Source: Obrimoposthia wandeli
Taxonomy: Eukaryota
DNA: 64,000 nt
Assembly (NCBI GenBank): GCA_977020255.1
Contig: CDROCS010000506.1
Location: forward strand, 806,001 to 870,000
Direction: 5' to 3'
The translations under genes and the position numbers were made by a program. Numbering within the stretch: position 1 is the stretch's first letter; the number at the start of each line of letters is the position of its first letter. Shown here piece after piece: positions 21,684 through 29,994 of the stretch. The notes under the pieces were generated by a model, which had not been told where the DNA came from, did no database searches, and saw only the letters and a program-made list of their open reading frames with translations.

Positions 21684-22214
21684 ATGCACAAGAATAAAGG
21701 TTTTACCCTCATTGAATTAGTGATTGTCATTATTATTTTGGGGGTATTGTCTGCAACGGCAATACCAAAGTTTCTTAATATTGGCACCGATGCTAAAAAT
21801 GCAACATTGCAGAGTATGCAAGGATCATTAAATGATGCCATTGAATTGTCATACGCTAAATTAGCCATTCATGGTAAAGAGGCTACTAGTATACTAATAG
21901 GTAAGGATGTGGGCGACATTATTGCAGGCTGTGACGATTGTATTTTTTATTATGGCCGGCCACAATTAGGTATCAAAACATTATCGGTGTTGATTGATGG
22001 CATAAATCCAGATAACGACGGCGACTTTGTACTGACAACGTCTATTTCATCTACTGCTGGGAATGTAAATTCGAATTATGCTTATATTACCTTGCCAGAA
22101 AATATGGATAGCAGTGGCAATATAATTGACCTATCCTGCTATATAAAGTATTCACAAGGCGGCTACTCAGCAACAGTAGCAAAACCAGAACTAACATTCA
22201 AAGAATGTAAGTAA
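21684..22214 (+). CDS. MshA-like type IV pilin / prepilin
   Basis: Class III signal KG^FTLIELVIVIIILGVLSATAIPKF; MSHA-type alpha-helix; C-terminal cysteines. Confidence 0.85.
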   Translation: MHKNKGFTLIELVIVIIILGVLSATAIPKFLNIGTDAKNATLQSMQGSLNDAIELSYAKLAIHGKEATSILIGKDVGDIIAGCDDCIFYYGRPQLGIKTLSVLIDGINPDNDGDFVLTTSISSTAGNVNSNYAYITLPENMDSSGNIIDLSCYIKYSQGGYSATVAKPELTFKECK

Positions 22215-23522: not shown

Positions 23523-23556
23523 AAAAAACGGCCTCAAACATACATTTGAGGCCGTT
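23523..23556 (-). terminator. Terminator of BCCT copy 1; same stem-loop as the copy 2 terminator
   Basis: AAAAAACGGCCTCAAACATACATTTGAGGCCGTT. Confidence 0.88.
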
Positions 23557-23601
23557 GGCATTTATTCTATTAAGCTTTACGCTTAACTTAACGCTAAATC
23601 A

Positions 23602-25200
23602 TTACTTGTATAAATGACGCTCTGAGTTCAAGCCTTTAATTAAGCTCACACACATAAGCAGCAATACAAACGTAAATGGTAGCGCGGTGATAGTCACACC
23701 CGCTTGTAACGCTTGCAGTGCTTCAGAACCACCAATCCATAACATAACACCAGCAATAGTACCTTCTACTACAGCCCAGAATATACGCTGTGGTACAGGT
23801 GCATCAATCTTACCGCCAGACGTGATGCTGTCGATTACCAGTGAACCCGAATCTGATGATGTAATGAAGAAGATTAATACTAAAATAATCGACAATACTG
23901 ATAGTACATCACCATACGGCAGTGCATCGTATACGTGGAATAAAGATAATGATAAATCAGTTAAGCCATTAGCGCCCAATTCACCCACTTTATTCACGAC
24001 TTGATCGATAGCAATACCACCGAATGTCGCCATCCAAACTAACGTTACTAACGTTGGTACAAAGACTACTGCAGACAAGAATTCACGTACAGTACGGCCT
24101 TTAGAAATACGCGCAATGAACATACCTACGAATGGTGACCATGAAATCCACCAAGCCCAGTAAAATACAGTCCAACCTTGCATCCAAGCAGTATCTTCAC
24201 GACCATGCGGATTACTTAAACCAATAAAGTTTTGGCCATAAGCAATTAAGGTTTCAGGAATTGCGACAGTGACAACATCAAAGCCAATAACCAATACAAA
24301 AAGCAATAAGGCAAAAGCAAATACCATATTGATATTACTCAATACTTTAACGCCGCCATCAATACCACGGATAACCGAGAAGATTGCAATTAAGGTTACA
24401 AAGGCAATCACAATCAACTGCATGCCAATGCCACCATCAGTACCAAATACATGATTGATACCACTTGTCGCTTGCTGTGCACCTAGACCTAGCGATGTCG
24501 CAAGACCAAATAGCGTTGCAAGAACAGCTAAGATATCAATAATGTGACCAGCCCAACCCCAAGCTCTATCACCAATAATCGGATAGAAAACAGAACGAAT
24601 TGAAAGAGGAAGACCTTTGTTATAAGCAAAGAAAGCCAACGCAAGCGCTACGATACCGTAGATAGCCCAACCGTGGATACCCCAGTTATAAATTGTTGCT
24701 GCAAGTGCTAATGACTTTGCTTCAGCAGTTAACGGTTCAACATTAAATGGTGTTCCCCACCAATTAGTGAAATAAGCCGTTGGTTCTGCAACACCCCAGA
24801 ACAGTAGACCGATACCCATACCACCAGCAAATAACATTGCTAGCCACGAGATCGTTGAATGTTCAGATTTTGCATCTTTACCACCAATACGGATCTTGCC
24901 AAACGGCGATACGATTAATACGGCAATAAAAAAGACGAAGAAGTTAGTTGACCACATAAAGAAGCTATCGAAATCAGCTAAAATGCCATTTTTAATAGTA
25001 TTTAATGTTTCTTTTGCGGTTGCTGGGTCTACTAGGAGGAGTGCTGAAAGGAAGAAGAGAATAAGGCCGGCACTGATACCGAACACAGGGTTATGTATAT
25101 CGAAACCCCATTTTTGTACATTATCTTGACCAACTTGGTAATCAGTGGTTTCAATACTGTATTTATTTGACGTACTATTTTTGTTTAACGAGCTATCCAT
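23602..25200 (-). CDS. BCCT (betaine/carnitine/choline) transporter, copy 1
   Basis: SWLAMLFAGGMGIGLLFWGVAEP, GWTVFYWAWWISWSPFVGMFIARISKGRTVREF, FFITSSDSG. Confidence 0.95.
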   Translation of the reverse strand: MDSSLNKNSTSNKYSIETTDYQVGQDNVQKWGFDIHNPVFGISAGLILFFLSALLLVDPATAKETLNTIKNGILADFDSFFMWSTNFFVFFIAVLIVSPFGKIRIGGKDAKSEHSTISWLAMLFAGGMGIGLLFWGVAEPTAYFTNWWGTPFNVEPLTAEAKSLALAATIYNWGIHGWAIYGIVALALAFFAYNKGLPLSIRSVFYPIIGDRAWGWAGHIIDILAVLATLFGLATSLGLGAQQATSGINHVFGTDGGIGMQLIVIAFVTLIAIFSVIRGIDGGVKVLSNINMVFAFALLLFVLVIGFDVVTVAIPETLIAYGQNFIGLSNPHGREDTAWMQGWTVFYWAWWISWSPFVGMFIARISKGRTVREFLSAVVFVPTLVTLVWMATFGGIAIDQVVNKVGELGANGLTDLSLSLFHVYDALPYGDVLSVLSIILVLIFFITSSDSGSLVIDSITSGGKIDAPVPQRIFWAVVEGTIAGVMLWIGGSEALQALQAGVTITALPFTFVLLLMCVSLIKGLNSERHLYK

Positions 25201-25487: not shown

Positions 25488-26597
25488 TTAATAGTACTGA
25501 TAATTACTCGAGTTACCTTCTTTTAGTCCTTTCGCCACATACATTGCAGAATCGGCAGTTAAAAATAATTTATTTACCGTATTCACCTCCTCTGATGAAA
25601 AAGAAATACCTATCGCAGAACCAACACAGACTATATGACCATCTATATTAATCGGTTGCTGTATCTGCTCTATGATCCGCTCAACAATCGTATCCACGTT
25701 TGTACGGTTACCGTAATCACACAAAATAAGAATAAATTCGTCACCACCAATACGAGAGAAAATATCCTCGCCACCAATACTATAGGACACTCTTTTTGCA
25801 ATCGTTTGCAATACTTCATCGCCGGTGTGGTGACCTAATGTATCGTTTATCTGTTTAAATCCATTCAGATCAATAAAAAAACAACATAGCGATTTTTTCT
25901 TTTGCATTTTTAACGTGATCAATTCAACACAACGCTTTCTATTCGGGAGCAGTGTTAACGCATCTATATTTGACTGTTCTTGCGTTCGTTTAAAGTTCAG
26001 ATACGTCACTGACCAAACGGTAATTAACAAGGTTACAATAAACAATGCACTATAGATAATGTATAACAGTCGCTGCTGGTTACGATTAACCTCGTCAGTA
26101 AAAAGGTTAAGATCACTGCCTTTCAATTCAAAAAATACAATCTTGTCATGGCCTAATTTTAATTGTTCAATAACCTTTAATATATCCGGATATTGATTAA
26201 CCGTTTTTTCTTCAGCCAAAATCGGCAACGCTACCTCATCTAATTTAACGATGTTTTCTTGCAAAGTATTAATCGCATAACGTTGTAATAAAGGCGATAT
26301 TTTTTCATCGAACGCTAAGTATTCATAACTCACAATTAAAAAATCTAATTTTTCTAATATGTCCTCGTTATCGCTTTTATTTAAATATATCGCCTTTTTT
26401 ATTTGTGCTTCAAATAGTGACAGTTCCTTGCCAAAATACCAAGTCCCCCAATATGATGCTCGTATCGACTCCACATTTCGCATGACATCTTTATTACTCT
26501 GCTCATATCTCAACGTAATAAAGCCAGCTAAACACAGTTCAAACAATATGATGACAGTCAAAGGCAACCACATTGCCGCAGTACACTTATTTTTCAT
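25488..26597 (-). CDS. Membrane diguanylate cyclase (two TM helices, periplasmic sensor, GGDEF)
   Basis: IDALTLLPNR, FIDLNGFKQINDTLGHHTGDEVL, RIGGDEF, AD.AMY.AK; no RxxD I-site; the ATG at 26597 overlaps the upstream stop codon. Confidence 0.9.
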   Translation of the reverse strand: MKNKCTAAMWLPLTVIILFELCLAGFITLRYEQSNKDVMRNVESIRASYWGTWYFGKELSLFEAQIKKAIYLNKSDNEDILEKLDFLIVSYEYLAFDEKISPLLQRYAINTLQENIVKLDEVALPILAEEKTVNQYPDILKVIEQLKLGHDKIVFFELKGSDLNLFTDEVNRNQQRLLYIIYSALFIVTLLITVWSVTYLNFKRTQEQSNIDALTLLPNRKRCVELITLKMQKKKSLCCFFIDLNGFKQINDTLGHHTGDEVLQTIAKRVSYSIGGEDIFSRIGGDEFILILCDYGNRTNVDTIVERIIEQIQQPINIDGHIVCVGSAIGISFSSEEVNTVNKLFLTADSAMYVAKGLKEGNSSNYQYY

Positions 26598-27102
26598 CAA
26601 GCTTAATTCCACAATTAATATCGATCCTTTCAACAAACCAAACTAGGTTAATCACAATATCTAATTCATGAATATCATCGATATTAACAGCACTCAAATC
26701 ACGCATTAATACGAGCGGCCCCTTCTGCCTTCGAGTTATCATTTCATCATTAATGGCATAAGCAAGCATGTACTTATGTTGCTGTAATTCTGCTGCAGAT
26801 ATCTGCACACTGTAATCATTCTTTGCATGTACATTTATCGTATCTAAGCTACTACCGTCAACACGCTTGATGATATCTTCAAGATAAACCCCTGAGTAGC
26901 GATGTGCCTGCTTTTTCCAAGGTAATAATGTCGTTATTTCAGTACTCTGTAAGGCTTTAAACGCTGGCATCGTAAAGCTTACACCTTGCTTGTTTTTACA
27001 GTTACTCACGCTGAAAACTGTTTTATCACTGCCGTACGAAAAGAACGTAATCAATGTTAACAACACACTGATTAGCCTGATTATAAAAACATTATTTTTC
27101 AT
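26587..27102 (-). CDS. Periplasmic molybdopterin-oxidoreductase-like (SUOX-fold) protein, PruR-like putative pterin receptor
   Basis: Signal peptide MKNNVFIIRL...YG; TTLLPW, YSGVYL, HAKNDY, KGPL, LVWFV; start placed at ATG 27102 behind an AAGG RBS. Confidence 0.75.
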   Translation of the reverse strand: MKNNVFIIRLISVLLTLITFFSYGSDKTVFSVSNCKNKQGVSFTMPAFKALQSTEITTLLPWKKQAHRYSGVYLEDIIKRVDGSSLDTINVHAKNDYSVQISAAELQQHKYMLAYAINDEMITRRQKGPLVLMRDLSAVNIDDIHELDIVINLVWFVERIDINCGIKLDEK

Positions 27103-27275
27103 GCTTACCTTCTTCATTATTGTCAATATATAAGCTTTTAATGGTTTTAACTTCAGGTAAGGAAAGGACAAATGTATCGACCAAACTGAGCTCAAGATGC
27201 TTGCCAGATTCACTTATAATAAGCGTTTCTGCTTGTGCACATGCTTTCTTATAAGCTCTTTCCGAGGTCAGCGCA

Positions 27276-27992
27276 TCAAACACATGACATCACACTTAAT
27301 GACTCTCGCGGATCTCGAACACTTAAATCGACATTATCTAAGATACAGCACAGGCCTGCGAAATCAGTGATATAGACACTGCTCCTTTCGAGTTCGATAT
27401 AACCTAAGCTTTCCAGTTGCTTTAGCGCTTCATTTACCCGTTGACGGGCAATACCGATAATCATGCTGATCTGCTGCTGTGAAATGGCAATTTTAGGGAT
27501 TGCGCCTTTAATTATTTTTTGGTGCATGGCTAACTCAATCAACAAATAACTAATTTTTATTAGTTTATTTTCAGATGAAAGTAGTTGTGATTGACGCCAT
27601 TTCCGCTGTGAAGCATTCACGACATGGTATAGCCATTTCACCACTTCTAAATCATCGTCCATTAAAATATTCAATTGATTTCGTGGAAAAAAAATTAAAT
27701 TAAGCGGTTCTATTTCTGATAATGAAAATGCCACTAAATTATTTTCTACCGATTGGCAATCTCCAAACCATTCTTGCTTTCCCATTACCATGCTGTTTAC
27801 TGTTTTTAAATTACGAGATTGCATGCAAATAGCAGCATTACCTTGGTATATATAACAAACACCATCAGAAAATATCTGCCGGTTATCCGTAAATTCCGTT
27901 TTACACTGTGCGATTTTAATTAATTTACGTTTAGTATTATTGGACAATGTAGTTGGCCAAATGATTGTTTTGGCGATCTCCAGTTGGATCAA
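27276..27992 (-). CDS. Crp/Fnr family transcriptional regulator
   Basis: cNMP-fold (EWFGD) and C-terminal HTH ISQQQISMIIGIARQRVNEALKQLE; TTG start. Confidence 0.85.
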   Translation of the reverse strand: MIQLEIAKTIIWPTTLSNNTKRKLIKIAQCKTEFTDNRQIFSDGVCYIYQGNAAICMQSRNLKTVNSMVMGKQEWFGDCQSVENNLVAFSLSEIEPLNLIFFPRNQLNILMDDDLEVVKWLYHVVNASQRKWRQSQLLSSENKLIKISYLLIELAMHQKIIKGAIPKIAISQQQISMIIGIARQRVNEALKQLESLGYIELERSSVYITDFAGLCCILDNVDLSVRDPRESLSVMSCV

Positions 27993-28126: not shown

Positions 28127-28142
28127 TGTCCGCTGGCGGACA
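28127..28142. promoter_or_regulatory. Perfect palindrome TGTCCGC-TG-GCGGACA, a putative operator
   Basis: 7-bp inverted repeat with TGTCC-N6-GGACA geometry, about 135 bp upstream of the Crp/Fnr gene. Confidence 0.45.
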
Positions 28143-28298: not shown

Positions 28299-28333
28299 AA
28301 AAAAACGGCCTCAAACATACATTTGAGGCCGTT
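28299..28333 (-). terminator. Terminator of BCCT copy 2
   Basis: Same stem-loop sequence as 23523-23556. Confidence 0.88.
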
Positions 28334-28380: not shown

Positions 28381-29994
28381 TTATTTATATAAATGATACT
28401 CTGAGTTTAAACCTTTTATGATACTCACACACATCACTAGCATTAACAATGCGAATGGTAGTCCGGTCGTTACAACACCCGCTTGTAGAGCTTGTAGCGC
28501 ATCAGTACCGCCGATCCAAAGCATAGTCGCAGCAATTGAACCTTGTATCACAGCCCAGAAAATACGCTGTGGAACAGGGGCATCAACTTTACCGCCCGAC
28601 GTAATACTGTCAACCACTAGCGAAGCAGAATCTGATGACGTAATAAAGAAGATTAATACCAATATAATCGATAATACTGACAACACTTTGCCATACGGTA
28701 ATACATCGTATACGTGGAATAATGATAACGAAATATCAGTCAAACCATTAATACCAAGCTCACCCACTTTATTCATAACTTGATCGATAGCAATACCACC
28801 GAACGTCGCCATCCATATCAACGTCACTAACGTTGGTACAAAGATCACGGCACACAAGAATTCACGTACTGTACGACCTTTAGAGATACGCGCAATGAAC
28901 ATACCTACGAATGGACCTAATGAAATCCACCATGCAAAGTAGAATACCGTCCAACCTTGCATCCATGATAGATCGTCACGGCCATGCGGGTTACTTAAAG
29001 CCACAAAGTTTTCAGCGTAAGCAATGAAGGTTTCAGGAATCGTTACTATGATCACATCAAAACTAATAATCAAAACAAAGATTAATAGTCCAAATGCAAA
29101 CACCATATTGATGTTACTCAATATTTTAACACCGCCGTTAATACCACGCATTACAGAGAATATTGCGACTAAAGTAACAAGTACAATAACAACTAACTGT
29201 AAGCCAAGACCGCCTTCAGTACCAAATACATGATTGATACCACTCGCCGCTTGTTGTGCACCTAAACCAAGTGATGTAGCTAACGAGAATAACGTAGCAA
29301 GTACAGCCATGATATCAACAAGGTGACCAGTCCAGCCCCACGCACGATCACCAATGATCGGATAGAATACCGAACGAATAGATAGTGGCAAACCTTTGTT
29401 AAAAGAAAAGAAAGCCAGAGCAAGTCCAACTACGCCATAAACAGCCCAGCCGTGGATACCCCAGTTATAAACTGTTGCCGCCAGCGCTAATGATCTTGCT
29501 TCAGCGGTGAATGGTTCAACATTTAATGGCGTTCCCCACCAATTGGTGAAATAAGCTGTTGGTTCAGCAACACCCCAAAACAATAGACCAATGCCCATAC
29601 CAGCAGCAAATAACATCGTCAACCAAGAGATAGTTGAATGATCTGTTTTAGCTTCTTTACCACCAATTCGGATTTTACCAAACGGTGATATAATCAGTAA
29701 CATAGTGAAAGCAACAAAGAAATTTGTTGACCACATGAAGACCACATCAAATTCTGCCATGATGCTATTTCTAACATTAGTTAGAACTTCTTTTGCGGTG
29801 GATGGTTCTACAAAGAGGAGGGCTGCAATGAGGATGAAGATTAAACCGGCGCTAATACCGAATACAGTATTATGTATATCGAAGCCCCACTTTTGAATGT
29901 TATCTTGACCGACTTGGTAGTCCGTGGTCTCAATACTATATTTATTTAACTGACTATTTTTTAACTGGTTACTTGTTTTAAACGCACTATCCAT
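28381..29994 (-). CDS. BCCT transporter, copy 2 (paralog of 23602-25200)
   Basis: Same BCCT motifs; GWTVFYFAWWISLGPFVG; long stretches identical to copy 1. Confidence 0.95.
   Translation of the reverse strand: MDSAFKTSNQLKNSQLNKYSIETTDYQVGQDNIQKWGFDIHNTVFGISAGLIFILIAALLFVEPSTAKEVLTNVRNSIMAEFDVVFMWSTNFFVAFTMLLIISPFGKIRIGGKEAKTDHSTISWLTMLFAAGMGIGLLFWGVAEPTAYFTNWWGTPLNVEPFTAEARSLALAATVYNWGIHGWAVYGVVGLALAFFSFNKGLPLSIRSVFYPIIGDRAWGWTGHLVDIMAVLATLFSLATSLGLGAQQAASGINHVFGTEGGLGLQLVVIVLVTLVAIFSVMRGINGGVKILSNINMVFAFGLLIFVLIISFDVIIVTIPETFIAYAENFVALSNPHGRDDLSWMQGWTVFYFAWWISLGPFVGMFIARISKGRTVREFLCAVIFVPTLVTLIWMATFGGIAIDQVMNKVGELGINGLTDISLSLFHVYDVLPYGKVLSVLSIILVLIFFITSSDSASLVVDSITSGGKVDAPVPQRIFWAVIQGSIAATMLWIGGTDALQALQAGVVTTGLPFALLMLVMCVSIIKGLNSEYHLYK

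What the first reader, a model, noticed from the sequence alone, without database searches (positions are those of the whole stretch)
25488..27992. Crp/Fnr, PruR-like pterin-binding protein and diguanylate cyclase: a candidate pterin-sensing c-di-GMP module
Seen: a secreted ~170-aa SUOX-fold-like protein (LPW, NDY, GPL, VWFV) whose stop overlaps by 11 nt the start of a two-TM GGDEF cyclase with an intact active site and no I-site. The cyclase periplasmic domain contains W-x7-E (WGTWYFGKE). Known: in Agrobacterium the periplasmic pterin-binding protein PruR controls the c-di-GMP enzyme DcpA encoded just downstream; I recall W/N/Y/W ligand residues and a Wx7E motif, which need verifying. Inferred: a cyclase-only marine version under a dedicated Crp/Fnr regulator, possibly linking extracellular pterins to biofilm formation.
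Basis: partly seen in the sequence, partly recalled or inferred. Interest (0 to 1): 0.7.

Follow-up and report, generated by a model that had tools for sequence, protein, structure and literature searches.

The report
PruR pterin sensor with diguanylate cyclase
A Moritella-like marine bacterium carries a small secreted pterin-binding protein (PruR type) coupled to a membrane enzyme that makes the biofilm signal c-di-GMP; the gene pair is of a kind catalogued in 2024, and here it is what remains of a five-gene operon that recently lost its signal-degrading half.

Summary
Three minus-strand genes lie at 25488-27992: a Crp/Fnr-like regulator, a 171-aa secreted PruR-type protein, and a 369-aa two-TM GGDEF cyclase whose start overlaps the pruR stop by 11 nt.

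PruR membership is well supported. The four best PDB sequence matches and the seven best Foldseek matches are the PruR crystal structures, and all four PruR signature residues (the Trp replacing the Mo-Cys and the three pterin-contacting residues) are kept. The cyclase loop (147 aa) matches DcpA-type periplasmic domains (hhalign 90%), with W50 and E58 on the invariant WX7E positions.

This kind is known. Greenwich et al. 2024 list more than 5,500 pruR-dcpA pairs, including cyclase-only ones (V. cholerae CdgA). Other pieces of this same assembly were already reported by this scan as PruR pairs.

New here:
- Relatives carry a five-gene cluster: Crp-like, SBP_bac_3, dCache-HD-GYP, PruR, DGC.
- The window has a ~2.8-kb deletion that leaves a 63-codon HD-GYP relic (27092-27283).
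- Moritella sp. F1/F3 lost the same two genes through a separate deletion.
- A conserved palindrome, TGTCCG-N4-CGGACA (28127-28142), lies upstream of every Crp-like ortholog.

Pterin binding, cyclase control and regulation by the Crp-like protein remain untested.

The parts
28127..28142 (-). 16-bp palindrome TGTCCG-N4-CGGACA, about 135 nt upstream of the Crp-like start; candidate operator of the Crp-like regulator
   Evidence: It is the only match in the 64-kb window, even with 2 mismatches allowed. Exactly one copy occurs, always upstream of the Crp-like gene, in every Moritella-type locus, and also in a Shewanella locus (L093). In the alignment of 9 loci the arms are invariant and the spacer varies. 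Function is inferred.
27276..27992 (-). Crp/Fnr-like transcription factor (238 aa, TTG start); its last ~5 codons were replaced by the deletion junction
   Evidence: HTH_Crp_2 E 2.6e-10. The Foldseek top 50 are all Crp/Fnr proteins, but the model is poor (pLDDT 56). It is 78-96% identical to orthologs that head the cluster in relatives.
27280..27285 (-). Deletion junction with a 6-nt microhomology (ATGTGT) between the crp 3' end and HD-GYP codon ~657
   Evidence: blastn against the intact loci L008 and L097 and junction alignments. About 2.8 kb (L097 1649-4435) is missing.
27092..27283 (-). Relic of an HD-GYP phosphodiesterase gene: its last ~60 codons only, with no catalytic motifs and an in-frame stop just upstream
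   Evidence: 73% aa identity to residues 657-716 of the 716-aa HD-GYP of L008, E 3e-27. The right-hand block that contains it (relic, pruR, dgc and the start of the downstream BCCT gene) is 94% nt identical to L097. The intact protein has HD and HHEKWDGSGYP motifs.
26587..27102 (-). pruR-type gene: secreted 171-aa pterin-binding-protein homolog (signal peptide ~1-24; P61-W62, N95, Y97, W155)
   Evidence: PDB phmmer: the top 4 hits are PruR structures, best 7kom at E 2.6e-9. AF2 model pLDDT 89.3. Foldseek top 7 are PruR structures, TM 0.88, rmsd 2.0 A, E 3.7e-10, against ~1e-4 for sulfite oxidases. The ligand residues are invariant in alignments. dN/dS 0.18-0.36.
25488..26597 (-). DcpA-type diguanylate cyclase, GGDEF only (369 aa): TM1 11-29, periplasmic loop 30-176, TM2 177-195, GGDEF domain
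   Evidence: Pfam GGDEF E 2.9e-35. Hydropathy. hhalign of its N-terminal 205 aa against 24 PruR-linked periplasmic domains: probability 90%, E 1.5e-6. dN/dS 0.06-0.13.
26424..26450 (-). WX7E motif (W50...E58) just after TM1
   Evidence: It aligns on the two invariant columns of the DcpA-type profile. It is kept in 4 of 5 Moritella-type orthologs; the C5369 ortholog has E one residue earlier.
25734..25748 (-). GGDEF active-site codons (residues 284-288); the I-site position upstream reads GGED
   Evidence: Read directly from the sequence.

Best explanation
The locus is a PruR/DcpA-type periplasmic-ligand c-di-GMP module in a Moritella-like gammaproteobacterium.

Proposed mechanism:
- The 171-aa protein is exported and binds a pterin in the cleft formed by N95, Y97 and W155. 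W62 replaces the Mo-coordinating cysteine of sulfite-oxidase-fold enzymes.
- The ligand-bound protein docks on the 147-aa periplasmic loop of the two-TM cyclase (W50/E58 region) and changes its cytoplasmic GGDEF activity. By analogy with Agrobacterium it most likely lowers c-di-GMP synthesis.
- The two genes are translationally coupled through the 11-nt overlap.
- They are probably transcribed from the promoter upstream of the Crp-like gene, which carries a conserved TGTCCG-N4-CGGACA site that the Crp-like protein would bind.

History: the present three-gene arrangement is secondary. The ancestral operon was Crp-like, SBP_bac_3, dCache-HD-GYP, PruR, DGC. That is a degrading arm and a synthesising arm, each with its own periplasmic binding protein. 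A ~2.8-kb deletion between 6-nt repeats removed the binding protein and all but the last 60 codons of the phosphodiesterase.

Shown here: family membership, fold, conserved residues, the deletion, and conserved synteny with the palindrome. Inferred: pterin binding, the sign of control, the operon structure, and the role of the Crp-like protein.
For: PruR membership:
- PDB sequence search returns the four PruR entries as its only significant hits.
- The AF2 model (pLDDT 89.3) matches PruR structures at TM 0.78-0.88, with an E-value five orders of magnitude better than sulfite oxidases.
- N95 and Y97 are invariant and W155 nearly so across 40 homologs; W62 is invariant across the 11 closest. These match the residues in PMC11194511.

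Cyclase:
- Two TM segments and a 147-aa loop, against 138-150 aa in the paper.
- hhalign probability 90%, with W50 and E58 on the invariant W and E.
- Intact GGDEF and upstream catalytic motifs.

Five-gene ancestry:
- Metagenome or sequencing-run contigs L008, L010/L011, L095/L096 and L097, the second contig C5369 of this assembly, and 3 of the 4 Moritellaceae species genomes that have the ortholog all carry Crp-SBP-HD-GYP-PruR-DGC.
- The relic is 73% identical to the HD-GYP C-terminus.
- The junction has been mapped.

Genes still under constraint: dN/dS 0.06-0.36.

Operator.

Transcription: no terminator-like site between crp, pruR and dgc; the one terminator found lies upstream, after the BCCT gene.
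Against:
- No FolM/PruA-type pteridine reductase reaches its cut-off anywhere in the assembly. The best candidate has the generic TGX3GXG motif. An endogenous reduced-pterin signal is therefore not evident. The same is true of V. cholerae.
- The near-invariant R of the DILWSR motif in DcpA-type loops is S90 here, and one close ortholog shifts the E of WX7E by one residue.
- The profile match is 90%, not higher, and rests on 5 query sequences.
- Promoter-like hits are not above chance.
- The C-terminal AK..GRN-like segment of GGDEF domains reads AKGLKEGNS. Whether that matters is my own recollection, not tested.
Confidence: 0.8

Rival explanations
1. The Crp-like gene is only a neighbour. It regulates something else, such as the flanking BCCT osmolyte transporters or only itself, and pruR-dgc has its own control.
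For: A 43-44% paralog in Moritella genomes sits next to a BCCT gene with no c-di-GMP genes nearby (L092; second hits). The 45-48% homologs in Shewanella are not linked to pruR or GGDEF genes, yet one keeps the same palindrome. None of 73 distant pruR loci has a Crp-like neighbour.
Against: Every ortholog of 78% identity or more heads the cluster, whatever lies upstream: BCCT in G101, F3 and the window; DUF1501 in G173 and C5369; thioredoxin in L095/L096. The gap from crp to the next gene is 30 nt in L097, and no terminator follows crp in the window.
Confidence: 0.2
2. The PruR-like protein senses a ligand other than a pterin, or acts without a ligand, in this lineage.
For: No pteridine reductase was detected in the assembly. 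PruR and the cyclase loop diverge much faster than their neighbours (47-53% identity against 85-94% in G173), which could reflect changing specificity. The review states that the in vivo ligand is unresolved even in Agrobacterium.
Against: The three pterin-contacting residues and the Trp replacing the Mo-cysteine are kept in all Moritella-type copies, including those only 43% identical. The fold matches neopterin-bound structures (7rkb, 7kp2) at rmsd 2.1-2.3 A.
Confidence: 0.15
3. After the deletion the remaining pruR-dgc pair is functionally dead or decaying, for example through loss of proper expression.
For: The deletion removed the upstream genes and clipped the crp 3' end. The relic shows more change against L097 (dS 0.39, dN 0.063) than the adjacent pruR (dS 0.08, dN 0.03).
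Against: Both ORFs are intact with all motifs. dN/dS is 0.06-0.36. The same two genes were kept intact after an independent deletion in Moritella sp. F1/F3. The Shine-Dalgarno sequence and the 11-nt coupling are preserved.
Confidence: 0.1

Closest known systems
V. cholerae VCA0075-VCA0074 (PruR homolog + CdgA), the cyclase-only form of the PruR-DcpA family (Greenwich et al. 2024, PMC11194511)
   Same: A secreted PruR-type protein sits immediately upstream of a two-TM protein of ~370 aa with a DcpA-type loop and a GGDEF domain only. The best structural match is the Vibrio PruR (7kom from V. vulnificus, 7kp2 from V. cholerae). V. cholerae likewise lacks a PruA-type reductase.
   Different: Sequence identity is only 20-22% in the Foldseek alignments. 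Here the pair belongs to a lineage-specific operon headed by a Crp-like gene and formerly included an SBP + HD-GYP pair. The near-invariant R of DILWSR is missing.
A. tumefaciens PruR-DcpA (Atu3496-Atu3495)
   Same: The fold (7kos/7kou, TM ~0.8), the W/N/Y/W residues, the WX7E position, the loop length and the gene order.
   Different: DcpA is a dual GGDEF-EAL enzyme that PruR switches toward degradation. Here the partner only synthesises. In the ancestral cluster the degrading activity was a separate HD-GYP protein with its own dCache sensor and SBP partner, and it is now deleted.
Periplasmic binding protein + transmembrane c-di-GMP enzyme pairs in general (e.g. NspS-MbaA in V. cholerae; named from my own knowledge)
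   Same: The logic of a soluble periplasmic ligand-binding protein docking on the periplasmic domain of a c-di-GMP enzyme. The lost SBP_bac_3/dCache-HD-GYP pair looks like this type.
   Different: The families of binding protein and sensor domain are different. No experiment has been done on the Moritella pair.
Crp/Fnr-family regulators, including the c-di-GMP-responsive Clp of Xanthomonas (3iwz)
   Same: An HTH_Crp_2 domain, overall Crp/Fnr architecture, and a 16-bp two-fold-symmetric candidate site.
   Different: The N-terminal domain scores below the Pfam cNMP_binding cut-off. No cysteines are conserved across the subfamily, so an FNR-type cluster is unlikely. The effector is unknown, and any link to c-di-GMP is speculation.

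Membership tests
PruR pterin-binding proteins | N-terminal secretion signal, small size (~150-175 aa) | tested here: met
   171 aa. A single hydrophobic segment at residues 5-23 follows K2. AF2 shows a detached N-terminal helix at 3-19. No SignalP run was available.
PruR pterin-binding proteins | Degenerate SUOX fold closest to the PruR crystal structures | tested here: met
   The Foldseek top 7 are PruR entries (7kom TM 0.88, rmsd 2.0 A, E 3.7e-10). Sulfite oxidases score E ~3e-4 or worse.
PruR pterin-binding proteins | Mo-coordinating Cys replaced by Trp (PW motif) | tested here: met
   P61-W62 aligns to the TPW of 7kos/7rkb/7kp2. W62 is invariant in A1.
PruR pterin-binding proteins | Pterin-contacting Asn, Tyr and Trp (A.t. 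N102, Y104, W160) | tested here: met
   N95 and Y97 are invariant and W155 nearly invariant in 40 sequences. They align to NDY and W in the PDB hits.
PruR pterin-binding proteins | Binds pterins | not testable with these tools
   Needs ITC, DSF or co-crystals.
DcpA-type PruR partners | Gene immediately downstream of pruR | tested here: met
   11-nt overlap.
DcpA-type PruR partners | Two TM segments around a periplasmic loop of ~138-150 aa | tested here: met
   TM 11-29 and 177-195; loop 147 aa.
DcpA-type PruR partners | Invariant WX7E shortly after TM1 | tested here: met
   W50 and E58 fall on the invariant W and E of 24 PruR-linked domains. Caveats: the C5369 ortholog has E one residue earlier, and a ~700-aa GGDEF-EAL subgroup lacks the W.
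DcpA-type PruR partners | Overall similarity of the periplasmic domain | tested here: met
   hhalign probability 90.2%, E 1.5e-6 over 149 columns. tblastn alone finds nothing.
DcpA-type PruR partners | Cytoplasmic GGDEF (with or without EAL) or TorS/BaeS-type kinase output | tested here: met
   GGDEF only, E 2.9e-35, no EAL.
DcpA-type PruR partners | Activity controlled by PruR | not testable with these tools
   Needs genetics or biochemistry.
Crp/Fnr transcription factors | C-terminal Crp-type HTH | tested here: met
   HTH_Crp_2 E 2.6e-10, above the cut-off.
Crp/Fnr transcription factors | N-terminal cNMP-binding-type beta-barrel | tested here: inconclusive
   No Pfam hit in the window protein. 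Orthologs score 16-18 bits against a cut-off of 27.5. AF2 N-terminal pLDDT is below 50. All top-50 Foldseek hits are full-length Crp/Fnr proteins, but TM is only 0.35-0.40.
HD-GYP phosphodiesterases (the relic at 27092-27283) | HD and HHExxDGxGYP catalytic motifs | tested here: not met
   Only the segment after GYP survives. It is a gene fragment, not a member.

The most novel reading that the evidence does not exclude
The ancestral Moritella operon is a two-input push-pull c-di-GMP unit. An SBP-gated HD-GYP degrades c-di-GMP and a PruR-gated cyclase synthesises it. Both are co-transcribed with an autoregulated Crp-like factor that binds TGTCCG-N4-CGGACA and may itself read the c-di-GMP level. 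Two independent losses of the degrading arm (this genome and Moritella sp. F1/F3) would then be adaptive rewiring toward a pterin-controlled, synthesis-only state. The parallel fast divergence of PruR and the cyclase loop would reflect co-evolution of their interface or ligand range.
Probability: 0.25. Interest if true: 0.6.

Novelty: new member of a known kind. Interest (0 to 1): 0.35.

Why it matters
PruR-linked signalling is a recently defined and still thinly tested way for bacteria to couple excreted pterins to biofilm decisions. This locus adds a cold-marine member.

The set of close relatives also offers a natural experiment. Near-isogenic versions exist with and without a partner phosphodiesterase arm (94% nt identity to an intact version). 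A candidate operator for the associated regulator is present. A graded series of PruR and receptor-loop pairs (47-95% identity) could be used to map the interface.

None of this changes the known picture; it gives material for testing it.

Tried and rejected
- tblastn of the cyclase's periplasmic part against 73 PruR loci gave no hit. A profile-profile comparison was needed.
- Two scans of metagenome contigs, one with the protein and one with an alignment, found no relatives.
- The look-up of encoding contigs had no record for P0012 or P0020 and no DNA for P0011.
- L007 and L092 are not in the species-genome collection. Moritellaceae genomes were reached instead through an order-level sample centred on an Aeromonas locus.
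- The search for a PruA/FolM pteridine reductase used E. coli FolM and NCBIfam NF005066 and NF006598. It returned only generic SDRs below the cut-offs. In this 1.35-Gb mixed assembly only the best candidates are scored, so this means 'not found', not 'absent'.
- The AF2 model of the Crp-like protein is poor in its N-terminal half (pLDDT 56 overall), so I draw no conclusion about its ligand pocket.
- I considered that the L012 contig showed a third deletion. It does not: its 243-aa ORF is the HD-GYP 3' part cut by the contig end.
- I considered that the window and F3 share one deletion. This is rejected because each keeps ancestral sequence that the other lacks.
Full report
**What is in the sequence**

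The interval 25488-27992 holds three minus-strand ORFs.

The first (27276-27992, TTG start, 238 aa) carries a Crp-type HTH (PF13545, E 2.6e-10) and no other domain above threshold.

The second is best started at the ATG at 27102, which follows an AGAAGG ribosome-binding sequence, and it ends at 26587, giving 171 aa. It has one N-terminal hydrophobic segment at residues 5-23. It matches Pfam Oxidored_molyb just above the cut-off (E 8.8e-6).

The third starts at the ATG at 26597, 11 nt before the end of the second gene, and ends at 25488, giving 369 aa. It has two hydrophobic segments (11-29 and 177-195) around a 147-aa loop. It also has a GGDEF domain (E 2.9e-35) with GGDEF at 284-288, GGED where an RxxD I-site would lie, and WGTWYFGKE at residues 50-58.

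**Is the small protein a PruR?**

PruR proteins are secreted. They have a sulfite-oxidase-like fold in which the Mo-coordinating Cys is replaced by Trp (P69-W70). They hold the pterin ring between Y104 and W160, with N102 hydrogen-bonding it. DcpA-type partners have two TM segments, a 138-150-aa loop and an invariant WX7E.

- A phmmer search of all PDB sequences returns the PruR entries as the only four significant hits: 7kom 2.6e-9, 7kos/7kou 6.6e-6, 7rkb 2.7e-4 and 7kp2 5e-3. LPW, NDY and VW align on the corresponding residues.
- An AlphaFold2 model built on a 40-sequence alignment has mean pLDDT 89.3.
- Foldseek against the PDB puts seven PruR chains first: V. vulnificus 7kom at TM 0.88 and rmsd 2.0 A over 133 columns, E 3.7e-10, then V. 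cholerae, A. fabrum and K. pneumoniae. Sulfite oxidases and dehydrogenases follow five orders of magnitude behind.
- N95 and Y97 are invariant and W155 nearly so in 40 homologs. W62 is invariant among the 11 closest.

Membership in the PruR family is therefore met for every feature that can be tested in silico. Ligand binding itself cannot be tested here.

**Is the cyclase a DcpA-type partner?**

tblastn with the loop finds nothing in 73 distant pruR loci. I therefore collected the genes immediately downstream of pruR in those loci. I aligned the first 200 residues of 24 of them, with GGDEF-EAL, GGDEF-only-length or kinase outputs. In that alignment W and E of WX7E are the only invariant columns, as the paper reports.

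I compared this profile with a profile of five Moritella-type N-termini. hhalign gives probability 90.2% and E 1.5e-6 over 149 columns, and it places W50 and E58 of the window protein on the invariant W and E.

There are caveats:
- The near-invariant Arg of the DILWSR motif is Ser here.
- The ortholog on contig C5369 has its Glu one position earlier.
- A WX7E in that zone arises by chance in 3.7% of shuffles, so the motif counts only together with the profile match.

The catalytic part looks active. DxLTxLPNR, the D/N/D metal and base motifs, and RIGGDEF are all present.

Between the crp-like stop and the pruR start lies a 63-codon ORF (27092-27283) whose product begins FDALTSERAYKKA. It is 73% identical (E 3e-27) to the last 60 residues of a 716-aa dCache/HD-GYP protein encoded just upstream of pruR in a related metagenome contig.

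Close relatives carry five genes in a row with tiny gaps: Crp-like, SBP_bac_3, dCache-HD-GYP, PruR, DGC. In L097 the gaps are 30, 4, -29 and 13 nt. The relatives are:
- L008, L010/L011, L095/L096 and L097;
- a second contig of this same assembly, C5369;
- three of the four Moritellaceae species genomes that have the Crp-like ortholog, out of 13 in that family.

The intact HD-GYP has HD and HHEKWDGSGYP motifs, and the SBP has a signal peptide.

Against L097, the closest intact version, the window lacks L097 1649-4435, about 2.8 kb. L097 is 94% nt identical over 3.2 kb on the pruR side.

The junction lies inside the crp 3' end, so the last five codons are replaced. It joins HD-GYP codon ~657 at a 6-nt repeat, ATGTGT.

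Moritella sp. F1/F3 (L007, G188) also lacks SBP and HD-GYP. However, it keeps the crp stop and about 15 nt beyond it, and it lacks a further 109 nt of the HD-GYP 3' end. Each genome retains ancestral sequence that the other has lost, so the two deletions are independent.

pruR and dgc remain under purifying selection, with dN/dS 0.18-0.36 and 0.06-0.13.

**The Crp-like gene**

Orthologs of 78-96% identity always head the cluster, whatever lies upstream: BCCT, DUF1501 or thioredoxin genes.

An alignment of the upstream regions of nine loci shows a palindrome, TGTCCG-N4-CGGACA, with invariant arms and a variable spacer.
- In the window it lies at 28127-28142, about 135 nt before the start codon.
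- It is the only match in 64 kb even with two mismatches allowed.
- It occurs exactly once in each Moritella-type locus. It also occurs upstream of a 45%-identical Shewanella homolog.

This is a good candidate for the regulator's own operator. No terminator-like site separates crp, pruR and dgc.

More distant homologs (43-48%) in Shewanella, and a Moritella paralog, are not next to c-di-GMP genes. None of the 73 distant pruR loci has such a neighbour. The link is therefore clade-specific.

The effector is unknown.
- The N-terminal domain falls below the cNMP_binding cut-off.
- No cysteines are conserved across the subfamily.
- The AF2 model is poor (pLDDT 56), although all top-50 Foldseek hits are Crp/Fnr proteins.

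**Pattern of divergence**

Identity to the window falls in step from the flanking genes to the sensor parts. For G173 the values are:

| Component | Identity to window |
|---|---|
| BCCT (the two paralogs) | 94% / 90% |
| LysE | 91% |
| Crp-like | 85% |
| GGDEF part of the cyclase | 70% |
| Cyclase periplasmic loop | 52% |
| PruR | 47% |

PruR and its presumed docking domain thus diverge together and fastest.

Synonymous divergence from L097 is 0.48 in crp but 0.08-0.21 in pruR-dgc. This suggests a mosaic history by recombination.

**Source of the ligand**

No FolM (NF005066) or pteridine reductase (NF006598) match reaches its cut-off in the whole assembly. The best candidate has the generic TGX3GXG motif rather than TGX3RXG. 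The 2026 review notes the same for V. cholerae and suggests that such systems may read exogenous pterins. In this large mixed assembly only the best candidates are scored, so the result is 'not found'.

**Where the DNA comes from**

The assembly has 1.35 Gb in 6,912 contigs and holds many bacterial contigs. The window's contig is Moritella-like. Its nearest named relatives are Moritella sp. F1/F3, and a genome whose 4,734,363-bp contig equals that recorded for M. marina ATCC 15381. That name is inferred, because genomes in that collection are unnamed.

The assembly also contains other PruR pairs: PruR+GGDEF, PruR+GGDEF-EAL (two copies) and PruR+histidine kinase. Two of these were already reported by this scan.

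**Comparison with what is known, and verdict**

More than 5,500 pruR-dcpA pairs are catalogued, about a quarter with kinase outputs and some cyclase-only, such as V. cholerae VCA0075-CdgA. The main text of that paper mentions neither HD-GYP, Crp nor Moritella. Its dataset is not held, so I cannot say whether this pair is already listed.

The finding is a new member of a known kind. What is added here is its context: a Crp-headed five-gene operon, a conserved candidate operator, and two independent losses of the phosphodiesterase arm.

The mechanism I commit to is as follows. A pterin-loaded periplasmic PruR docks on the cyclase loop and modulates c-di-GMP synthesis, most likely lowering it. 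Expression comes from the autoregulated crp-like promoter. I put confidence at about 0.8 for the module's identity and history, and at about 0.5 for the sign of control.

Noticed in passing
window 23602-25200 and 28381-29994: Two BCCT transporter paralogs (about 80% aa identity) flank the module. In G173, G057 and contig C5369 the same two genes lie in tandem downstream of the cluster, so the cluster or one BCCT gene has been rearranged within Moritella. A near-identical ~35-nt terminator hairpin follows both paralogs (28304-28333 and ~23523-23557).
   Followed up: partly
G000 contigs C5369 (L018/L013), C3840, C2637, C2422, C2357: The 1.35-Gb assembly is a mixture with many bacterial contigs. 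C5369 is the orthologous locus of a second Moritella-like genome with the intact five-gene cluster. Four further PruR pairs are present with GGDEF, GGDEF-EAL (two copies) and histidine-kinase partners.
   Followed up: partly
L015, L016, L053, L084, L085, L087, L088, L091 (genes downstream of pruR): A subgroup of ~700-aa GGDEF-EAL PruR partners lacks the Trp of the 'invariant' WX7E and has F/L-x-x-Q-Y-E-Y-E instead, while keeping the LWSR motif. The PruRs of L015 and L016, the two checked, read NW or RW instead of PW.
   Followed up: partly
L093 7428-7443 (Shewanella sp. 10N.286.45.A1): The same TGTCCG-N4-CGGACA palindrome lies upstream of a conserved 94-aa ORF plus a 45%-identical Crp-like gene that has no c-di-GMP neighbours. 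This suggests the site is a subfamily-wide operator.
   Followed up: no
window 27294-27992 against 25491-27102, compared with L097: Synonymous divergence from L097 is 0.48 in crp but 0.08-0.21 in pruR-dgc and 0.10 in the downstream BCCT gene. The SBP and HD-GYP genes of L097 are closest to the G173 type, while its PruR and DGC are closest to the window. The cluster is a recombination mosaic.
   Followed up: partly
window 21684-22214 (+): A 176-aa ORF with a type IV pilin/pseudopilin-like N-terminus (KGFTLIELVIV). It was seen in the ORF list only.
   Followed up: no
window 25491-25535 (cyclase C-terminus): The segment that in many GGDEF domains reads AK..GRN is AKGLKEGNS here and in all Moritella-type orthologs. 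Whether the missing Arg affects activity was not assessed.
   Followed up: no
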